Shown in pieces: positions 5,385-57,200 of a stretch of DNA of 64,000 nucleotides. The notes below the pieces were generated by a model. The model searched no databases, was not told where the DNA came from, and worked only from the letters and a program-made list of their open reading frames with translations. The first letter of the stretch is position 1, and each line of letters opens with the position of its first letter. The stretch is from positions 124,001 through 188,000 of IMG/VR virus record IMGVR_UViG_3300042387_000948. One strand, given 5' to 3'. The position numbers were made by a program, and so were the translations under genes.

Positions 5385-5936
5385 TTATTGTATTGTAATT
5401 TGTATTTTTGTTTTTGTCCCATCGGGTTGTGAATAAACTGCGTATTGAGGTACACATTTTAATTCGGTTTTTACTTTGTTTAACATATCTACATATTTTT
5501 TACCATAGCCAGGTTTTAGATATGCAATAGTTAAATGTGGGTGGTAATCTGGATACGATGTTGTGTGTGGTAGTTTTTGCAATTCTGCATTTGTTTCGTG
5601 CAATGCAGGACCAGATACATCAAACTTTAGTACATCAAATTTTTCGTTTTCAAAAAGTGATGGATTGTATCCTTTGCATTCACCATATCCAAAATTACCC
5701 AATATACCCTTTACATCATCAACTGATACATCGTTGTGTAATCCATATAAAAATGTAGTGTGAGGTTCATCTTCAATACCATATCCACCATTAGTATCTT
5801 CTTCGTAAAGATGCTGTGGATTTATAGCATCCTGAATTTTGAATACTTCTGGTACTGAAAAATACAACATAGCACACCCATAATCATATGTACCTTTTGA
5901 TTCTTTGATTGAATTAAGTAACGTTTTTAATTTCAT
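5385..5936 (-). CDS. 2H phosphoesterase (2'-5' RNA ligase / Acb1-gp57B-like)
   Basis: Two HxT motifs: EPHTTFLYG and YHPHLTIAY. Confidence 0.8.
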   Translation of the reverse strand: MKLKTLLNSIKESKGTYDYGCAMLYFSVPEVFKIQDAINPQHLYEEDTNGGYGIEDEPHTTFLYGLHNDVSVDDVKGILGNFGYGECKGYNPSLFENEKFDVLKFDVSGPALHETNAELQKLPHTTSYPDYHPHLTIAYLKPGYGKKYVDMLNKVKTELKCVPQYAVYSQPDGTKTKIQITIQ

Positions 5937-27483: not shown

Positions 27484-28605
27484 TTATCGTATGATTGATT
27501 CTTTTACTAATTGTTGGAGTTGATTAACTGCCAACCTAGCTTCGTTTTGTGTTATAGTATCACCTTTCTTTTCTGCATTATATTCTTCAACTGCTTTTGC
27601 TATTATTTCATTGGGTATATCCATTTTTTCTATATTATCGGCTATTACTGAAAGAAATTGCTCCATTGCCTTTTCTTCATCACTATCAGTATCACCAGCA
27701 AATAATGCTGCCTTACCAACCCCAGCTATAATAGTTTCTTCAACAACATGCGGAATGAATCCACTAACACACTTTGCGGCAAATGCACCAGCACCAGCTC
27801 CCAATCCACCTGTCACAACACCAAGTACAACCCCTAATGCAAACTTTTTAGCAACACTTTTTACTGCTTTCTTTTGTGGTTCGGTCATATCAATACCATC
27901 TTTCCACATTGCAATTCCTGTTGCAGCATCTTTAAATGTATGAACTTCGTGTTTAAACCCTTTTTTAAGAGCATGGTAAGCACCGACTGCTTTATCTTTT
28001 AATGCCTTACCCCAACTTCTTCTTTCTGGTGTATCACCTTTATGTACTTTTTCTTTAAAAAATGCTTTTTCTTCTTCCGCCCAATCTTTGATACCATCTT
28101 TAATTGCTCTAACATACACTTTTGGTTTTGTTACTGCGGTTTTTACATTTTTTCTTAAACCAGCTTCATCATCACTACCTGATGAATGAGCTGCTATTTT
28201 AGCTTGTGTTTCTTTTTCTGTATCCATTCTAGCTGCCATAGCAGGGTCTGCTGTAAATAATTGAGCTTTTACTTGTGGTGATGGTTCGTTTGAGGATGGT
28301 TTTTCAGATTGCGGTGTTTTTTCATCACCACCTTTTTTAGTATTATTAATTGATGGTACTGATTTTCCATCTTTTTCACTACCCAATGATTTGTTTATTG
28401 CTTTTCTTTCTGGTGTCCCATCCTTTGGAAGTGTTTTTTCAGCAGCAATTCTACCTGCACTATCTTTGGGTAATCTTAACAAATTACCAACAATACCTTC
28501 GGTATCTTCACCTTTGGAGTTTTTGTATTTTATCTTTTTATTTAACGCAGGATTACTAAAATTTTTATCATCTGCCTCCGTTACTAACTTTGATAATCTA
28601 ATCAT
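27484..28605 (-). CDS. Hypothetical protein with a Gly-rich hydrophobic segment; possible internal head protein
   Basis: MIRLSKLVTE start; FALGVVLGVVTGGLGAGAGAFAA segment. Confidence 0.6.
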   Translation of the reverse strand: MIRLSKLVTEADDKNFSNPALNKKIKYKNSKGEDTEGIVGNLLRLPKDSAGRIAAEKTLPKDGTPERKAINKSLGSEKDGKSVPSINNTKKGGDEKTPQSEKPSSNEPSPQVKAQLFTADPAMAARMDTEKETQAKIAAHSSGSDDEAGLRKNVKTAVTKPKVYVRAIKDGIKDWAEEEKAFFKEKVHKGDTPERRSWGKALKDKAVGAYHALKKGFKHEVHTFKDAATGIAMWKDGIDMTEPQKKAVKSVAKKFALGVVLGVVTGGLGAGAGAFAAKCVSGFIPHVVEETIIAGVGKAALFAGDTDSDEEKAMEQFLSVIADNIEKMDIPNEIIAKAVEEYNAEKKGDTITQNEARLAVNQLQQLVKESIIR

Positions 28606-35026: not shown

Positions 35027-35406
35027 TGGTGGAGATGGCGGGATTCGAACCCGCGTCCAGATAAGTTTCTAATGTAAATCGTTCACAAGTTTAGGATAGT
35101 GTTTTATCTTACTAACACTCCAAAAGAATTGGGGCCGAATGGTTAATTCAGCAGATTCCACCAATCCATTTTAAGTTTGGATAAACTTAAATGTTCACTT
35201 CTTTTTAAATCCCATGAGTGATACGGGAGCGATTAGGCAGCTACTGCGTAATCGAAAGACTCCATCCATGCCATAGCATCTCCGAAAGTCATTGTAGATA
35301 ATTCTACGTCTGCACTTATTGTTTGATAGGTCTTCAAAGGTTTCCATCTAACCTTACTTGCATCAATACAACCAGTCTTCATACCTGTCAAAAGCCGGTC
35401 ATCCCC
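35027..35406 (-). ncRNA. ssrA: tmRNA (one-piece, 380 nt)
   Basis: 5' GGGGATG pairs with 3' CATCTCC-ACCA, including G3.U; T arm GCGGGTTCGAATCCCGC; resume context AATAAGT-GCA; tag ORF 35313-35233 ADVELSTMTFGDAMAWMESFDYAVAA*. Confidence 0.95.
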
Positions 35407-50471: not shown

Positions 50472-53400
50472 TTACTTACCCAATAATGCCTTTAATTCAT
50501 TTATTTGTTGTTGTTGTTCTTTTATTGCCTCAATTAGTAATGCCGTTATTCTTCCATAAGATACCGAATCTGCTTCTCCAGATTTTGTAAAGTTAATAAT
50601 TTCAGGAACAATATCTGCAACTTCTTCCGCAATTACACCAATTTCAGTATCATCCGAACCTTTTCTATTGTAAGTTACACCTCTTAATAATAATACTTTA
50701 TCCAATGATTTATTTAAACTAACTACATTTTCTTTATATCTAATAGATGATGTTTCTGTCAATGATATACAATTCAGTACATTTAAGTTTGTTGTACCAT
50801 CCGGGTCACAATAATACCCACTATTATTTGAATCATAAATTATAGTTGACCAGAATACACCTGAACTTTCGTTCAAGCCATACATTGCTATTTTATACCA
50901 AGCACGTTTTGTATTCCAATAAGATGTATGCCATAAACCTTGAATAGGTCCACCAACTATTTGGATACCATATCCGTTATTATACCCAGCTACATAGTGA
51001 TGGGCCTGAACACCTACATAGTGAGATGTATCACCAGGAGAGTTTGGAATACCACCCCAAGTATCAATAAATCCAGACCCCCAACCAAATGCAGAAATAA
51101 AATCGGTTGTACCCCAACCCATTGTACCTACCCAATAGTTAGAATCTCCAGTATAATCGTTTCTTCTAAAGTTACCTTTGGCTGTCAAACCAATTCTCAT
51201 TTTAGAGTAATCATCAGTTCCTTGCCATCTAGTAGTACCATTTCCATCAAAATAGAATCCGGTATCACTTCTGTCATAAAATATAGCTGAGCGAATATCT
51301 CCCGTATTAATGTATGAACCATCGTTTACGGTTAATGGTACGTTAAAGTAAAAATTAGGTCTATCAGTGTACATGTGTGCATGTCCACTATTCGCAGGTC
51401 CAAACCAAATATATCCATCATTTGTTCTAAATCTAACTCCCCATGTACTTTCCCCATCAAATCTACCAGTATTAGTTGATGTACCAAATCTTAGTTGATT
51501 AAATATAGATGTAGATAACGGGTCTGCGTAATATCCAGTATTATCTCTATCATAAAATATTGGTGCTCTCATCGAATCTCTAGCAAACATATTACCAGAA
51601 GTATCTATACCACCAACCGTTTGACCTGCAGCTTCCGAATAAAAATGGAAAGATTCAGTTCCCACTAATTGCGATGTTACTCTTTTACCAACATACCAAC
51701 CACTACCACTACCACCATTATAACGAACCATAGCTTCGTATCCATTTCCTGGATTGATATAAAGGTATTTGTTTGATGCACCGGTAATAGTTAAATCCCA
51801 AAGAACAGATGTTGAACGAGGGTCTGTATAATAACCGGTATCGTTACTATCGTAGAATATTGGTGCTCTTAATGAGTTACCACCCGTTGCGTAATTGTTA
51901 AATAATACAGTATTGTTTGGATACAACTCCATATTAGTAACTCTAGTACCAGATGTGTTAGTATTGTAGAAATATATATCCCCAGATGAAGCGAATCTCA
52001 TATAACCTTGTCCAAACGAAGTATTTAGTCTACCAAATCCAGAAGGAGAACCACCATCGTTTGTTACGTTATATCCAAATCCAGCTCCTTCCCAACTTAC
52101 ATTAGGTTCAGAACACCACATTTGCAGTTGTACAATACCAGTACCATTTCCATTATTTGCAGCAGGTAATCTATTAATTATTTGAGAAGTAGCATGTGCT
52201 CCACTATTTCTTATACCACCAAATAATTCGGTAAATGTTGCAGGGTCTACATAATAAGCAGTATTTGCCGAATCATAAAACGCAGTTGCATATAATCCAG
52301 TAGCGTTCCAATATCCTAATTCAGCTCTATTATAACGATAGAAATGTAATGCTCCTCCAGCTGCACCAGCTTCAGTTTTTCTGCCACCAATACCAGCATA
52401 TTCTCTAATTGTTCCACCACTATCTTTTAGTTGGAAATGTAAATTAGAACCTACTGATGTTGCTGAGTTATTGTGATTTGTTCTTGTTAAATGTAATGTA
52501 CCATATGTACCATCATCACTAAATGAAGTTCCACCTTTTCTCATATCAAACGCAACAGGTGTCGAATTTGATGTGTGCTCTAATATTACTTCATTTGCAT
52601 TACTAAAGTTTATTGCATTACCAGCGTTTGTTAAATTTAATGTAGCAAATGTTGGAGAATCGGTTGTTTGAATATTTTGATTCATTAAATGAACTTCAGT
52701 TGCACCAGGACCTGTGTTAATATTACCAGCTATTGTTAGTGTAGTACCATCAAATGTAAGATTACTTTCAACTGTTGCGTTTGGTGCAGTTCCGTTTAAT
52801 GTAATTACACCATTATCGGTTGTACCGGTTAAAGCAAGTACTCCAGACGTACCAGATGTACCAGCGCCAGATGTTCCAGACGTACCAGATGTACCAGCAC
52901 CAGATGTACCACTACTTCCAGATGAACCAGATGCGCCGGATGAACCAGATGCGCCGGATGCACCAGAAGTACCACTACTTCCACTACTTCCAGAAGAACC
53001 AGATGCGCCGGATGCACCACTACTACCACTTGTACCACGTGTACCAGACGTACCTGATGTGCCTGAAGTACCACTTGTACCAGAAGTTCCGGATGAACCA
53101 GAAGTTCCGGATGAACCAGAAGTACCACCAGAACCAGAAGTACCAGCTGCGGCTAACCAAGCTGAACCATTATATCGATATATGTTTGTATCTGAAGTAT
53201 TGTAATATATTTGTCCAGCTTTTGTACCAACAGGATTTGTTGCGAATGCTGGAATTCTCAATGAACCACTTATATCCACCGAACCAGTAAATTCTTGTGT
53301 ATCATTTGTTGCATCACCAAATTTATTTGAACCAGATGAGTAAATTAAAGATGATGAAATAAATTGTACTAATATTTGTTGTGCTCGGATTGTACCACCA

Positions 53401-56400
53401 ACAGTTAAGTTACCACTAAGGGTTTCGTTTCCAGTAATAGTAGAATTACCCACTAAAGTTTGAGTTCCAATAACATTTAAGTTTTGAACTCTAGTACTAC
53501 CACTTACATCTAATGCAAATGTTGTTGATGGGTTTTGATTTATACCTAAACTACCAGTAATTATTGTATGTGCGGTTGATATTACAGTATTTCTACCACC
53601 AATAATATCAACTTTCTTTAAATTAGTATTATTTAATAAAGATGTTGGTTGGGTTGCTTGTGCAGTTAGTGTTGTAACTGAACTACCTCTTGTCAAATAT
53701 ACATTAAAAGTTCCGGCAGCACTAGTACAAGCCTGCACAAACACCCATATTTCAGGATTAGTTGCACTTGCAGTATCACCTACTATAAAACTATTTATAG
53801 TTGTATTATTTAATCTACTATATGGATGTACAATTATATCAGTTCCCTGATTATATGCCCCCACTATAAAAGTCACTTCACCACCATATCCATTATTATC
53901 CCAACTACTTTCAATATAAGTTGATAATGTTTGTTGACCATAAGTTGTGTATGAATTATGTATTCTTATATAAGCAGCGGGGTCTCCGGGATTTCTAACT
54001 AATGTTAATTTTGTATTATAAACATTACCACCTCTAATGTACTCACCAGTTATACCTCTGATTATTGTTACATCATTTCGTAATCTAGTAGAACCACTAA
54101 CATCTAATGTAAATCCACCATTTACAGTTGAACCAACGGTTAAGTTACCACTAATGGTTTCGTTTCCAGTTACCGCAAGAGTTGTACCATTAAATGTTAA
54201 GTTTGCCTCAACACTTGCGTTTGGAGCAGTTCCGTTTAATGTAATTACACCATTATCAGTTGTACCTGTCAATGAAAGTAAACCAGAAGAACCAGAAGAA
54301 CCAGATGTACCGCTTGTACCGCTTGTTCCAGATGAACCACTACTTCCAGAAGAACCACTACTACCGCTTGTTCCGGAAGTACCTCGTGTCCCAGATGTTC
54401 CGGATGTTCCAGAAGTACCGCTTGTTCCAGAAGTTCCAGAAGTACCGCTTGTTCCACTAGCACCAGTTGCTCCAGAAGAACCACTACTTCCAGAAGAACC
54501 ACTACTTCCAGATGAACCACTACTACCGCTTGTTCCAGAAGTACCTCGTGTCCCAGATGTTCCAGAAGTTCCAGATGTACCGCTTGTACCACCAGTACCA
54601 GCAGTTCCCATTGTACCACTTGAACCAGATGTTCCAGAAGTACCAGATGTTCCACTTGTGCCGGAAGTACCACTACTACCGCTTGTTCCAGAAGTACCAC
54701 TTGTACCCCCACTACCAGATGTTCCGGCTGCTGCTAACCAAGTTGTACCATTGTATCGATATATGTTTGTATCAGCTGTGTTATAATATATTTGTCCAGC
54801 TTTTGTTCCCGTTGGGTTTGATGGATATGCTGGAATTCTTAATGAACCACTAATATCTACCGAACCAGTGAATTCTTGTGTATCATTTGTTGCATCACCA
54901 AATTTGTTACTCCCACTTGCGTATATTAATGATGATGAAATATATTGTACTAATATTTGTTGTGCTCTGATTGTACCACCAACCGTTAAGTTGCCACTAA
55001 GGGTTTCATTTCCAGTTACCGTTAAAGTAGTACCATCGAATCTAAGATTAGCCTCCGCAGTTACGTTTGGAGATGCACCATTAAGAGTAATTACACCATT
55101 ATCGGTTGTACCACTTATAGATAATGCTCCAGAAGTACCAGATGTTCCGCTTGTACCGCTAGTACCAGATGTACCACTTGTACCCGAAGAACCTCCACTA
55201 CCAGCAGTTCCGTTTGTTCCACTTGAACCCGATGAACCACTACTTCCGCTTGAACCACTACTACCAGATGTTCCGCTTGAACCAGATGTTCCAGATGAAC
55301 CTCCACTTCCTGCAGTTCCGTTTGTTCCAGAAGAACCAGAAGAACCAGATGAACCAGATGTTCCGCTTGTTCCACTTGTTCCGCGTGTACCAGATGTACC
55401 ACTTGTTCCAGATGTTCCAGAAGAACCCCCACTACCAGCAGTTCCACTACCACCACCAGCTCCAGTTACACCACTACTACCACTCGTTCCAGATGTTCCA
55501 GATGTTCCACTTGAACCAGTAGTTCCAGAAGAACCACTACTACCTGATGAACCCGAAGTACCTACAGTTCCAGAAGAACCAGAAGTACCTGATGTACCCG
55601 AAGTACCAGCAGTTCCCGAAGAACCACTACTACCAGATGAACCACTACTACCAGATGAACCACCAGCTCCAGTTATACCACTTGTACCGGAAGTACCAGA
55701 TGTTCCACTTGTACCAGATGTTCCAGAAGTTGCGGATGTACCACTCGTTCCAGAAGAGCCAGTTGTACCAGATGAACCAGTTGTTCCACCACTACCAGAT
55801 GTACCAGATGAACCAGTAGTACCACTACTACCACTTGAACCAGAAGTTCCAGAAGTACCTCCACTACCAGATGTACCAGAAGAACCAGATGAACCAGATG
55901 AACCAGATGAACCAGATGTACCACCACTACCAGCAGTTCCTCTTGTACCACTACTACCGCTTGTTCCAGAAGTACCAGAAGTACCAGAAGTTCCGCTTGT
56001 TCCAGAAGAACCCCCACTACCAGATGTACCACCACTACCAGACGAACCATCCGTACCAGATGAACCAGATGAACCAGATGAACCACCACTACCGCTTGTA
56101 CCACCACTACCGCTTGTACCAGATGAACCACCACTACCGCTTGTTCCAGATGTTCCAGAAGTACCAGAAGTACCAGATGATGCAGCTGCAGTTCTTCTAC
56201 CAACCACACCAGTAGTTGTATTAAGTACTAAGAATTCTTGCGTTGTATTATCGGTAGTTACATTGGTATTATCAAATCTAACACTACCAGAAACTGCTAA
56301 ACTACCACTTATACCTAACGAACCTGTTATTTCTTGTTTATCGTTACTTGCATCACCAAATTTGTTTGAACCAGATGAAAAAATAATTGATGATGATATA

Positions 56401-57200
56401 TAAGTTACTTTTAATTCAGTTGCGTTTATTGTACCACCAACACTTAAATTTCCAGTTATTGTTTCATTACCAGTGATGGTTTGATTTCCAATCACACTTG
56501 AATTACCCACTAAAGTTTGAGAACCAGTTATTCTTAGTGCACCAGATATAAAAGTTGAACCACTTATATCAAATTGAGTTGTTGGTGTTTTTCTTATACC
56601 AACATTTCCACCACCATTTGCTAAAATTACATTAGATGTTGATGCCCTATTAAGATATAAATCTACATTTGTTGAATCTATTCTACCATTAGATGGTGTA
56701 ATTGCAATTGTTCTACCATTAGTAGTTGCGGTTATTGAAATTGAAGTATCGGGTGCGTTTACATTAATACCACCACTAACTATGTTTAAATTTCCACCAT
56801 TTATGTTTTCACTACCACTAATATTTAATGAACCACTTATCGTTGTATTTGTATTTACAACTAATCCTAAATTTGGTGAAATTACTGCTTGTGCTGAACC
56901 TGATTTAATTCTATCCAAATCACCAATTGAAGATGCATTGATATTCGTTAAACCACTACCATTTCCTGTAAATAATGATGCCGATACTGAACCACTAAAT
57001 TGTGAATTTGCATTTATTTGTAATGTTGCTCCGTTTGGAGTCCCAATTTGATAAGTTTGTACGGCCGAACCACTTAGTTTACCAACAACACTTACCGATT
57101 CTGAAGTAGCAGTTAAAATAGATGAACCACTTACAAAAAGTGATACACTATTTACACTATTTTGATTTAACCCATTGGGACTTTTACCGTTGAACTCCAT
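50472..57200 (-). CDS. Giant tail fibre (2242 aa) with GTS repeats and a C-terminal intramolecular chaperone (peptidase S74-like)
   Basis: [10 protein letters not shown] cleavage motif, [31 protein letters not shown] coiled coil. Confidence 0.9.
52845..56180 (-). repeat. Gly-X-Y (GTS/GSS) repeat blocks within the 2242-aa fibre
   Basis: Three blocks at about 55130-56180, 54290-54730 and 52845-53150. Confidence 0.9.

What the first reader, a model, noticed from the sequence alone, without database searches (positions are those of the whole stretch)
5385..5936. Acb1/gp57B-like 2H phosphoesterase with a possible capsid-targeting N-terminus
Seen: two HxT motifs. HTTSYPDYHPHLTIAY resembles the second motif region of T4 gp57B/Acb1 as I recall it. 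Known: Acb1 hydrolyses CBASS cyclic nucleotide signals. The N-terminus MKLKTLLNSIKES resembles the leaders described in the next finding. Inference: an anti-CBASS or anti-CRISPR type III signal nuclease that may be packaged and injected with the DNA.
Basis: partly seen in the sequence, partly recalled or inferred. Interest (0 to 1): 0.65.

Follow-up and report, generated by a model that had tools for sequence, protein, structure and literature searches.

The report
Acb1-like phosphoesterase with capsid-targeting-type leader
A marine T4-like ("Far-T4") phage encodes a small RNA/nucleotide-cutting enzyme distantly related to the anti-CBASS nuclease Acb1, and its first 12 residues match a leader shared by unrelated proteins of the same phage that looks like T4's signal for loading proteins into the capsid, so the enzyme may be injected with the DNA.

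Summary
The ORF is real: window 5385-5936, minus strand, 183 aa. It is a 2H phosphoesterase. Two His-x-Thr motifs (H59/T61, H134/T136) are invariant in 51 homologues. The AlphaFold model (pLDDT 89) matches solved 2H enzymes at Z 11-14.

The nearest characterised family is Acb1, but the relationship is distant:
- its only PHROG hit is phrog_755, the T4 57B family;
- Pfam Acb1 is its best hit but scores 24.6 bits, under the cut-off of 27;
- hhalign against T4-type Acb1 gives 92% probability;
- fold comparison does not separate Acb1 from Usb1, LigT or CPDase;
- Acb1's C-terminal Trp lid and E141 contact are missing.

The N-terminal observation holds and is the more interesting part. Six other unrelated ORFs of this genome start with M-I-K/R-L-x-x-(I/L)-(L/V/M)-x-E, and the motif never occurs inside a protein. 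In relatives it heads genes next to a T4 gp21-type protease, whose known cleavage motif is L/I-x-E. All 115 family members scored keep a hydrophobic-x-E 3-9 residues (4-5 in 111 of them) before the fold, and the leader is disordered in the model.

Packaging, cleavage and substrate are all untested. The substrate could be a cyclic-oligonucleotide signal or a 2',3'-cyclic-phosphate RNA end. This genome record lacks its head module.

The parts
5385..5936 (-). Complete CDS, 183 aa plus stop (P0001): leader followed by a 2H phosphoesterase domain
   Evidence: ORF list and translation. 851 homologues of about 180 aa. AlphaFold2 model with mean pLDDT 89.1.
5901..5936 (-). Residues 1-12, MKLKTLLNSIKE: putative capsid-targeting/propeptide leader ending in I-K-E, with predicted cleavage before S13
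   Evidence: pLDDT is below 50 for residues 1-13. All 115 family members scored have a hydrophobic-x-E 3-9 residues before the core motif, 4-5 residues in 111 of them. The same kind of leader is found on six unrelated ORFs of the genome.
5388..5900 (-). Residues 13-183: predicted mature 2H phosphoesterase, about 19.3 kDa, pI 5.3
   Evidence: Foldseek and VIA-align matches cover model residues 15-183. Mass and pI were computed.
5754..5762 (-). First catalytic motif, H59-T60-T61
   Evidence: H59 and T61 are invariant in alignment A1. They align with H44/T46 of T4 Acb1.
5529..5555 (-). Second catalytic motif with its Acb1-like lead-in, Y128-P-D-Y-H-P-H134-L-T136
   Evidence: Y131, P133 and H134 are invariant; T136 is nearly invariant. 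The stretch aligns with F107-D-D-Y-T-P-H113-I-T115 of T4 Acb1.
27484..28605 (-). Second leader-bearing ORF in the window (373 aa, starts MIRLSKLVTE), with no Pfam or PHROG match. It belongs to the same leader family, not to the enzyme.

Best explanation
The gene encodes a catalytically competent, metal-independent 2H phosphoesterase of a large marine-phage clade whose nearest characterised relative is the anti-CBASS nuclease Acb1. Residues 1-12 form a detachable propeptide of the kind T4 uses as a capsid targeting sequence. The proposed sequence of events is as follows. The leader binds the prohead scaffolding core. The phage's gp21-type (Peptidase S77) protease cuts after I-K-E12. The mature 171-residue enzyme stays in the head and enters the next host with the DNA. 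There its His-x-Thr tetrad cleaves ribonucleotide phosphodiester or cyclic-phosphate bonds. The most likely targets are cyclic-oligonucleotide immune signals (CBASS or type III CRISPR). The alternative is 2',3'-cyclic-phosphate RNA ends. Shown here: the fold, the catalytic residues, the distant Acb1 relationship, the leader family, its L/I-x-E ending, and the S77 protease in relatives. Inferred: targeting, cleavage, injection and substrate.
For: Enzyme:
- H59/T61 and H134/T136 are conserved in 51 homologues.
- The model has pLDDT 89 and matches 2H enzymes at Z 11-13.8.
- The only PHROG hit is phrog_755 (1.2e-8). That family holds T4 57B (228 bits) and FBB1 Acb1 (199 bits).
- Pfam Acb1 is the best Pfam hit, and 50 of 51 family members match it.
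- hhalign against a T4-type Acb1 alignment gives 92% probability, E 5e-7, and spans both motifs.

Leader:
- Residues 1-13 are disordered in the model.
- Six other unrelated ORFs carry the same leader: 6 N-terminal and 0 internal occurrences in 63,845 residues.
- Serine is encoded by different codon families in two otherwise identical leaders, and the upstream DNA is unrelated, so selection acts on the peptide.
- In 994 kb of related head-module loci, 17 of 18 six-frame matches start long ORFs on the gene strand.
- In the complete genome G006 (288,673 bp, terminal repeats) the leader heads the 2H homologue and three ORFs in the head module, two of them between the S77 protease and the scaffold genes.
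- All 115 family members scored keep a hydrophobic-x-E (107 of them L or I) 3-9 residues before the fold, 4-5 residues in 111 of them.
- T4 gp21 cleaves after L/I-x-E, and a 10-residue CTS suffices for packaging (PMC9026906).
- The three genomes carrying a P0001 homologue that were tested have Peptidase_S77 at 93-103 bits. Close relatives of this phage have gp20/gp21/gp23-type head genes.

Other support:
- The Colly_1 homologue lacks the leader, so the leader is a modular add-on.
- Packaged 2H domains have been proposed before, from MuF/portal fusions (PMC9503650).
- Four of 14 large genomes with this gene have no detectable RNA ligase.
Against: - There is no direct evidence of packaging, cleavage or activity.
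- This genome record holds neither an S77 protease nor a Gp23 capsid gene. It ends 191 bp upstream of the head-tail adaptor gene, so the protease is inferred from relatives.
- The Pfam Acb1 score is under the gathering cut-off (24.6 against 27). PDB sequence matches to Acb1 are not significant.
- Fold comparison does not favour Acb1 over Usb1, LigT or CPDase. T4-type Acb1 models rank below other phage 2H proteins.
- Of Acb1's ligand contacts (PMC9117128), the C-terminal lid with W147 and the E141 contact have no counterpart, and Y12 appears unmatched.
- The gene lies among replication and glycosyltransferase genes, not late genes.
- The mature protein is acidic (pI 5.3), unlike most of the other leader-bearing proteins.
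- Some homologues lie next to RNA ligases.
Confidence: 0.45

Rival explanations
1. It is an RNA end-healing 2',3'-cyclic phosphodiesterase. It opens the cyclic-phosphate ends left by host anticodon nucleases or other metal-independent RNases, so that the phage's kinase, phosphatase and RNA ligase can reseal tRNA. This would work whether or not the enzyme is packaged.
For: - In a 242,855-bp contig the homologue lies directly after Rnl1- and Rnl2-type RNA ligase genes, near an AAA_33 kinase, a HAD phosphatase and a metallophosphatase.
- RNA ligase lies within 10 kb in 8 of 80 loci, and RNA-repair-type genes in about 14 of 80.
- This genome also has an Rnl1-type ligase, a P-loop kinase and a HAD phosphatase.
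- The HAD phosphatase-like protein carries the same leader in G006.
- Pfam 2_5_RNA_ligase2 matches 48 of 51 members almost as well as Acb1 does.
- The literature assigns this role to many phage 2H proteins (PMC7824862; PMC9503650).
- A megaphage homologue is fused to an RNase T-type exonuclease.
Against: - In this genome the gene lies about 90 kb from the ligase cluster.
- Ligase within 10 kb in a tenth of loci is about what chance gives for genomes of 200-290 kb. Only close adjacency is mildly enriched.
- Four of 14 large genomes with the gene (CheckV 95-100%) have no hit over the cut-off to either RNA ligase family.
- The RNA 2',3'-cyclic phosphodiesterase equivalog TIGR02258 scores 13 bits against a cut-off of 65.7.
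- The only PHROG matched is the Acb1 one.
Confidence: 0.3
2. The enzyme works only in the cytoplasm of the producing cell, as T4 Acb1 is thought to. The conserved N-terminal peptide is not a capsid-loading signal. It could be a short amphipathic helix for another shared partner, a stability or turnover tag, or a site that lets the late protease switch the protein off.
For: - The gene lies in a replication/early-type neighbourhood with 3-4 nt gaps to its neighbours.
- No virion data exist.
- The complex prediction of protease with leader gave no answer (not evidence either way).
- The Maribacter phage homologue has no leader although that phage has a weak S77 match.
- The phage G Acb1-like protein was not found in its proteome (PMC12484599).
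Against: - The same leader heads three ORFs of the head module in G006, two of them between the protease and scaffold genes, and recurs at that position across relatives.
- It ends in the exact motif that gp21-type proteases cut, and T4 precedent shows such a 10-residue peptide is sufficient for packaging.
- The motif is confined to N-termini.
Confidence: 0.3
3. The ORF or its motifs are chance features without function.
For: None found.
Against: There are 851 homologues at E up to 1e-3, with 34 invariant columns including both catalytic motifs, and a confident fold.
Confidence: 0.01

Closest known systems
Acb1 (T4 gene 57B; Erwinia phage FBB1 Acb1, PDB 7T26/7T27; Pfam PF23474; phrog_755)
   Same: It has the 2H fold and the HxT/HxT tetrad. 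It shares the lead-in (F/Y)-x-D-Y-x-P-H-(I/L)-T-(L/I)-x-Y before the second motif, and Y64 matches Y49 after the first. It is similar in size and phage-encoded. Acb1 is its only PHROG hit and its best Pfam hit.
   Different: About 15-18% identity. It scores under Pfam's cut-off. It has no C-terminal lid (residues 145-152 with W147). The E141 position is variable, and Y12 appears to be replaced by Ala/Val. The C-terminus is a beta-hairpin, and residues H67, H132 and C21 are additionally conserved. It carries a 12-residue cleavable-type leader. T4-type Acb1 has a 9-residue N-terminal peptide without an L/I-x-E site.
T4 internal proteins IPI, IPII and IPIII with their capsid targeting sequence
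   Same: A leader of about 10 residues is shared by otherwise unrelated proteins of one phage. It ends in L/I-x-E. The genes are partly clustered in tandem (genome 104123-105894). Most mature products are small and basic, and the head module is T4-type with a gp21-like protease in relatives.
   Different: The consensus differs: MIKLxxLLxE against T4's MKT(Y/F)(Q/K)EF. The cargo here is an enzyme of known fold. Nothing has been shown experimentally, and no paper in the held library links Far-T4 phages with capsid targeting or propeptides.
LigT/ThpR, the CPDase domain of tRNA ligase (Trl1), and plant CPDase (RNA 2',3'-cyclic phosphodiesterases)
   Same: Same fold and tetrad. Z is 11-13 to PH0099, Arabidopsis CPDase, Deinococcus CPDase and E. 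coli LigT. The gene is occasionally linked to RNA ligase and kinase genes.
   Different: TIGR02258 scores 13 bits against 65.7. LigT_PEase matches only 3 of 51 members. No fusion to a ligase or kinase was seen.
2H domains fused to MuF, portal or large virion proteins (Iyer, Burroughs and Aravind 2022)
   Same: The proposed logic is the same: a 2H enzyme is delivered from the phage head to counter oligonucleotide signalling (PMC9503650). The structural neighbours in BFVD include 2H domains inside proteins of 550-1100 residues, one of them named a structural protein.
   Different: Delivery here would be by a short cleavable leader, not by fusion to a head protein.

Membership tests
2H phosphoesterase superfamily | Two His-x-Thr/Ser motifs | tested here: met
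   H59-T-T61 and H134-L-T136. H59, T61 and H134 are invariant and T136 is in at least 90% of 51 sequences.
2H phosphoesterase superfamily | Two-lobed alpha/beta fold with the motifs facing a central cleft | tested here: met
   The model has pLDDT 89.1. Z is 11-13.8 over 130-160 residues to Usb1, PH0099, CPDase, Acb1 and LigT. Foldseek probability is 1.00.
Acb1 (PF23474 / phrog_755) | Score over Pfam's gathering cut-off | tested here: not met
   24.6 bits against a cut-off of 27 for this protein. 50 of 51 relatives match at E below 0.01, best 1.9e-7.
Acb1 (PF23474 / phrog_755) | Profile similarity to bona fide Acb1 that spans both catalytic motifs | tested here: met
   phrog_755 is the only PHROG hit (1.2e-8), and T4 57B and FBB1 Acb1 belong to it. 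hhalign of A1 against A2 gives 92.3%, E 5.4e-7, over residues 55-143 against 40-122.
Acb1 (PF23474 / phrog_755) | Aromatic base-stacking residues Y12, W74, F107, W147 and the adenine contact E141 (PMC9117128) | tested here: inconclusive
   F107 aligns with Y128 (Y/F in the family). Invariant F95 lies two positions from the W74 column, across an alignment gap. Y12 would fall on A22 if the two invariant Gly residues at the start of strand 1 correspond. There is no Trp in the C-terminus, and the position corresponding to E141 varies. No residue-level structural superposition was available.
Acb1 (PF23474 / phrog_755) | Flexible C-terminal lid (residues 145-152) that closes over the ligand | tested here: not met
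   The C-terminus is modelled as ordered strands (159-169, 175-178) at pLDDT about 95, and it has no Trp.
Acb1 (PF23474 / phrog_755) | Cleavage of 3'3'-cGAMP, cUA, cAAA or cAAG 3' of adenosine | not testable with these tools
   This needs a biochemical assay.
T4-type capsid-targeted, gp21-processed head proteins | A short N-terminal peptide shared by unrelated proteins of the same phage | tested here: met
   Seven ORFs in this genome and six or more in G006. The peptide is disordered in the model.
T4-type capsid-targeted, gp21-processed head proteins | The leader ends in the L/I-x-E cleavage motif | tested here: met
   I10-K11-E12 in the target. 115 of 115 homologues scored have a hydrophobic-x-E 3-9 residues before the fold, 4-5 residues in 111 of them. 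The motif is as described in PMC9026906.
T4-type capsid-targeted, gp21-processed head proteins | The phage encodes a gp21-type (Peptidase S77) protease and a T4-type scaffold and capsid | tested here: inconclusive
   Absent from this record, which also lacks Gp23 and ends at the adaptor gene. Present in relatives: L037 at 102 bits, with Portal_T4 and Gp23; L015; G004, G005 and G006.
T4-type capsid-targeted, gp21-processed head proteins | Presence in virions with a processed N-terminus | not testable with these tools
   No cultured phage carrying this gene with a leader was found. No proteome is available.
RNA 2',3'-cyclic phosphodiesterase (LigT/ThpR, TIGR02258) | Score over the equivalog cut-off | tested here: not met
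   13.3 bits against a cut-off of 65.7.
RNA 2',3'-cyclic phosphodiesterase (LigT/ThpR, TIGR02258) | Consistent linkage or co-occurrence with RNA ligase and polynucleotide kinase | tested here: inconclusive
   Adjacent in L093/L094 and a few other loci. RNA ligase lies within 10 kb in 8 of 80 loci. Ten of 14 large genomes have an RNA ligase and 4 do not.

The most novel reading that the evidence does not exclude
Far-T4 phages, which are abundant in marine and freshwater viromes, use their own capsid targeting sequence (consensus MIKLxxLLxE, cut by a gp21-type protease). With it they load a varied set of 7-10 or more proteins per genome into the head. One of these is an Acb1-like nuclease that arrives ready-made with the DNA and destroys cyclic-nucleotide alarm signals before any phage gene is expressed. 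The leader would then be a sequence tag that picks out injected counter-defence proteins across hundreds of uncultured phage genomes. The CTS-like start of T4 Acb1 itself (MMEFKDF) hints that capsid delivery may be an older property of this enzyme family.
Probability: 0.25. Interest if true: 0.8.

Novelty: new variant of a known kind. Interest (0 to 1): 0.6.

Why it matters
If the leader is a capsid-loading signal, it provides a simple sequence rule for listing the injected proteins of a very abundant but almost uncultured phage group. Such proteins are prime candidates for counter-defence functions. It would also be the first case of an Acb1-type nuclease delivered as protein rather than expressed after infection. 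That changes the timing argument for how phages beat signalling-based immunity. If the enzyme instead heals RNA ends, it would be a packaged RNA-repair enzyme, which is equally undescribed. If the leader is not a packaging signal, the gene is an ordinary member of the widespread phage 2H phosphoesterases.

Tried and rejected
- Searching this genome for the prohead protease (PF03420) and the capsid gene (PF07068) found nothing. This is explained by the record ending just upstream of the head-tail adaptor gene, not by a different head type.
- PHROG scans of about 40 proteins of the genome left most structural proteins unnamed.
- megablast of the first 20 kb against known phages gave no match.
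- The T4 late-promoter motif TATAAATA is not enriched before genes here, so it gave no timing information.
- Structure searches could not tell Acb1 from other 2H families. A profile search of PDB sequences gave only non-significant hits.
- The complex prediction of the G006 protease with the first 45 residues of the G006 homologue returned "no answer" (score 0.00). It is not evidence either way.
- Literature searches for the BCSR5 phosphodiesterase and for Far-T4 combined with capsid targeting or propeptide found nothing.
- The idea that the leader reflects shared DNA (a promoter or 5' cassette) was rejected. Upstream regions are unrelated and the leaders differ at synonymous sites.
- The non-conserved H124-T-T126 was rejected as a catalytic motif.
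- The search of protein representatives, the reads tools and alternative genetic codes were not needed and were not used.

Full report
**Where the window lies.** The window is bases 124001-188000 of a 207,029-bp IMG/VR virus record (G000). The record has 34% G+C and nearly all its genes are on the minus strand. It carries T4-type replication genes: clamp loader, B-family polymerase, UvsX-like and gp32-like proteins, helicase and primase. It also carries contractile-tail genes. It has neither a Peptidase_S77 nor a Gp23 match, and it ends 191 bp upstream of a head-tail adaptor gene (genome 205684-206838).

Contigs that share that adaptor at 69-95% identity show what lies just upstream of it. They carry a T4-type head module:
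- Portal_T4, 218 bits;
- Peptidase_S77, 102 bits;
- an acidic scaffold protein;
- Gp23 capsid protein, 258 bits.

So the record is cut at the head module despite CheckV's "100% complete". The capsid protein of a close relative is nearest to Flavobacterium phage immuto, Microcystis phage Mel-JY01 and Rhodothermus phage RM378. That places the phage in the Far-T4 group (PMC4360716).

**The observation.** The ORF at 5385-5936 (minus strand) encodes 183 residues. A word-index search found 851 homologues of about 180 residues, mostly from metagenomes. In an alignment of 51 of them, 34 columns are invariant. These include H59, T61, H134, P133 and Y131; T136 and H132 are in at least 90% of sequences. 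The middle triplet H124-T-T126 is not conserved.

**The fold.** AlphaFold2 run on that alignment gives mean pLDDT 89.1 and pTM 0.83. Only residues 1-13 fall under 50. Foldseek against the PDB returns only 2H enzymes at the top: Usb1, the BCSR5 phosphodiesterase/Acb1, penguinpox cGAMP phosphodiesterase, FBB1 Acb1, plant CPDase and LigT. All have TM 0.47-0.59. VIA-align puts them all at Z 11-13.8, for example:
- human Usb1: Z 13.8;
- PH0099: Z 13.2;
- FBB1 Acb1: Z 12.2, rmsd 2.7 Å over 131 of 137 residues.

The fold assignment is firm, but structure does not say which 2H family the protein belongs to. In BFVD the nearest models are other phage 2H proteins: Maribacter phage Colly_1 (TM 0.74/0.84), two "cyclic phosphodiesterase" proteins of uncultured myoviruses, and Tenacibaculum phage PTm1. 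T4-type Acb1 models come in at TM 0.50-0.56. The list also includes 2H domains embedded in proteins of 550-1100 residues, one of them named a structural protein.

**Is it Acb1?** The sequence evidence points to Acb1 as the nearest characterised family, but distantly.
- Pfam Acb1 is the best hit at 24.6 bits, under the 27-bit cut-off. 2_5_RNA_ligase2 follows at 18.4 bits.
- Across the family, 50 of 51 members match Acb1 (best 1.9e-7) and 48 match 2_5_RNA_ligase2 (best 9.7e-7).
- Among 38,880 PHROGs the only hit is phrog_755 (1.2e-8). That is the family of T4 57B (228 bits) and FBB1 Acb1 (199 bits). Colly_1 and another homologue also hit only it.
- hhalign of the family against 15 T4-type Acb1 sequences gives 92.3% probability, E 5.4e-7. 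It pairs H59/T61 with H44/T46, Y64 with Y49, Y128 with F107, Y131 with Y110, and H134/T136 with H113/T115.
- Direct searches of PDB sequences are not significant.
- The RNA 2',3'-cyclic phosphodiesterase equivalog scores 13 bits against 65.7.

Hobbs et al. define Acb1's ligand site by Y12, W74, F107, W147, E141 and a C-terminal lid at residues 145-152 (PMC9117128). Here only the F107 position is clearly matched. An invariant Phe (F95) sits two positions from the W74 column. The lid, its Trp and the conserved Glu are absent. The C-terminus is instead an ordered hairpin.

I therefore file the protein as an Acb1-like but separate 2H clade, with unknown substrate preference.

**The leader in this genome.** Seven ORFs of this genome start alike:

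| Genome position of start | Length (aa) | N-terminus |
|---|---|---|
| 33112 | 250 | MIKLKSILSE |
| 104665 | 180 | MIKLKDLLFE |
| 105206 | 178 | (GTG start) IKLKSILSE |
| 105604 | 132 | MIKLIDLME |
| 105894 | 96 | MIKLTQILTE |
| 152605 (window 28605) | 373 | MIRLSKLVTE |
| 129936 (the target) | 183 | MKLKTLLNSIKE |

Written as a pattern, the core occurs six times directly after an initiator Met and never internally in 63,845 predicted residues. The proteins are otherwise unrelated and mostly without family matches. Four of them lie in tandem. Their upstream DNA is unrelated, and two identical leaders encode Ser with TCC in one and AGT in the other. Selection therefore acts on the peptide.

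**The leader in relatives.** In 994 kb of head-module loci from relatives, the pattern occurs 18 times in six frames. Seventeen of these start ORFs of 128-524 codons on the gene strand, and most head the gene between protease and scaffold.

In the complete genome G006 (288,673 bp, terminal repeats) the leader heads several kinds of gene:
- the 2H homologue;
- a gene between terminase and portal;
- two genes between the S77 protease and the scaffold;
- a tandem cluster that includes a HAD phosphatase-like protein.

**The leader within the 2H family.** N-terminal extensions vary from 11 to 27 residues. Even so, every one of the 115 members scored has a hydrophobic-x-E (L or I in 107) placed 3-9 residues before the conserved Y-x-Y-G-C strand, at 4-5 residues in 111 of them. 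The Colly_1 homologue starts directly at that strand, without a leader. The closest homologue in the phage collection is from a 635-kb uncultured phage. It starts MKLKKYKQFIKE and continues into an RNase T-type exonuclease domain.

**How this compares with T4.** In T4, the first 10 residues of IPIII suffice to load foreign proteins into the head. The propeptide binds the scaffolding core and gp21 removes it by cutting after L/I-x-E. The internal proteins are a varied set of anti-defence proteins that share only that signal (PMC9026906; PMC3012670). The leader family here has the same length, position, ending and genomic behaviour. Relatives encode the same type of protease. This is the basis for the proposed mechanism, but every step after translation is inference.

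**Substrate.** Two readings remain open.

For a signal nuclease:
- the Acb1 affinity described above;
- the logic of pre-loading an enzyme that must act early;
- four of 14 large genomes with the gene lack any RNA ligase hit over the cut-off;
- Iyer et al. have already proposed head-delivered 2H domains acting against oligonucleotide signalling.

For an RNA end-healing phosphodiesterase:
- direct adjacency to Rnl1 and Rnl2 ligases with kinase and phosphatase genes in one 243-kb contig, and similar neighbourhoods in a minority of loci;
- the leader on a HAD phosphatase-like protein;
- the general role assigned to phage 2H enzymes.

The most common neighbourhood, which includes this window, is clamp loader - exonuclease - small ORF - 2H - two glycosyltransferases. 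The 2H gene shifts position among those genes between loci. That pattern says little about function.

**Verdict.** The enzyme class is certain and the Acb1 label is a reasonable but unproven nearest neighbour. The capsid-targeting idea is supported by strong comparative sequence evidence but by no physical evidence. Within the held literature I found no description of this leader in Far-T4 phages.

Noticed in passing
window 35027-35406 (-): A full-length tmRNA gene in the phage genome. ARAGORN predicts a tag peptide ending in AVAA. Rfam RF00023 scores 99.6 bits against a cut-off of 47.
   Followed up: partly
window 27484-28605 (-); genome 32360-33112, 104123-105894 (L004, L008): A family of at least seven ORFs share the leader M-I-K/R-L-x-x-(I/L)-(L/V/M)-x-E. 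Four lie in tandem. Most predicted mature products are basic (pI 8-9.4) and have no known domain. They are candidates for an internal-protein-like set.
   Followed up: yes
G000 record end (genome 205684-207029; L010): The record is called 100% complete but has no capsid, portal, protease or scaffold genes. It stops 191 bp upstream of the head-tail adaptor gene, where relatives carry the T4-type head module.
   Followed up: yes
L011:3953-4411 (T4 gene 57B) and T4 genes ipI, ipII, ipIII, 61.1: T4 Acb1 starts MMEFKDF. The pattern M-x-x-(F/Y)-(K/Q)-(D/E)-F occurs six times on both strands of T4: at the starts of ipI, ipII, ipIII, 61.1 and 57B, and once antisense in nrdB. 57B lies next to ipI. The FBB1 Acb1 crystal construct begins at G10. 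A Morganella T4-like phage virion preparation listed a gp57B homologue with 2 peptides, which the authors say may be an impurity (PMC5384007). Whether T4 Acb1 enters heads is unknown to me.
   Followed up: partly
L202:2116-2715 (Edwardsiella phage vB_EpM_ZHS, ZHS_4): A 199-residue protein annotated 'prohead protease' is in fact an Acb1-like 2H protein (phrog_755, 2e-18). It lies between the terminase and portal genes.
   Followed up: partly
L179:1501-2814 (uncultured 635-kb phage LR745206): This is the closest homologue in the phage collection. It is a 438-residue fusion of a leader (MKLKKYKQFIKE), a 2H domain and an RNase T-type DEDD exonuclease (PF00929, 31.8 bits).
   Followed up: partly
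G006 243627-244175 (L192); genome 105939-106472 (L008:5939-6472): A HAD phosphatase-like protein (phrog_415 'polynucleotide kinase') starts MIKLKDMISRSLFVES in G006 and MISRTLFLES in this genome. It sits at the edge of the tandem leader-gene cluster.
   Followed up: no
window 50472-57200 (-), window 59288 onward (-), genome 194219-203422: Three giant ORFs of 2242, 3322 and 3067 codons lie in the tail/fibre region.
   Followed up: no
genome 39498-43080 (L004/L005): A run of about ten small paralogous ORFs start MLTIKN- or MLRIKN-.
   Followed up: no
genome 98136-99734 (L007:18136-19734): A 532-residue subtilase (Peptidase_S8, 110 bits) is encoded next to tail-fibre genes.
   Followed up: no
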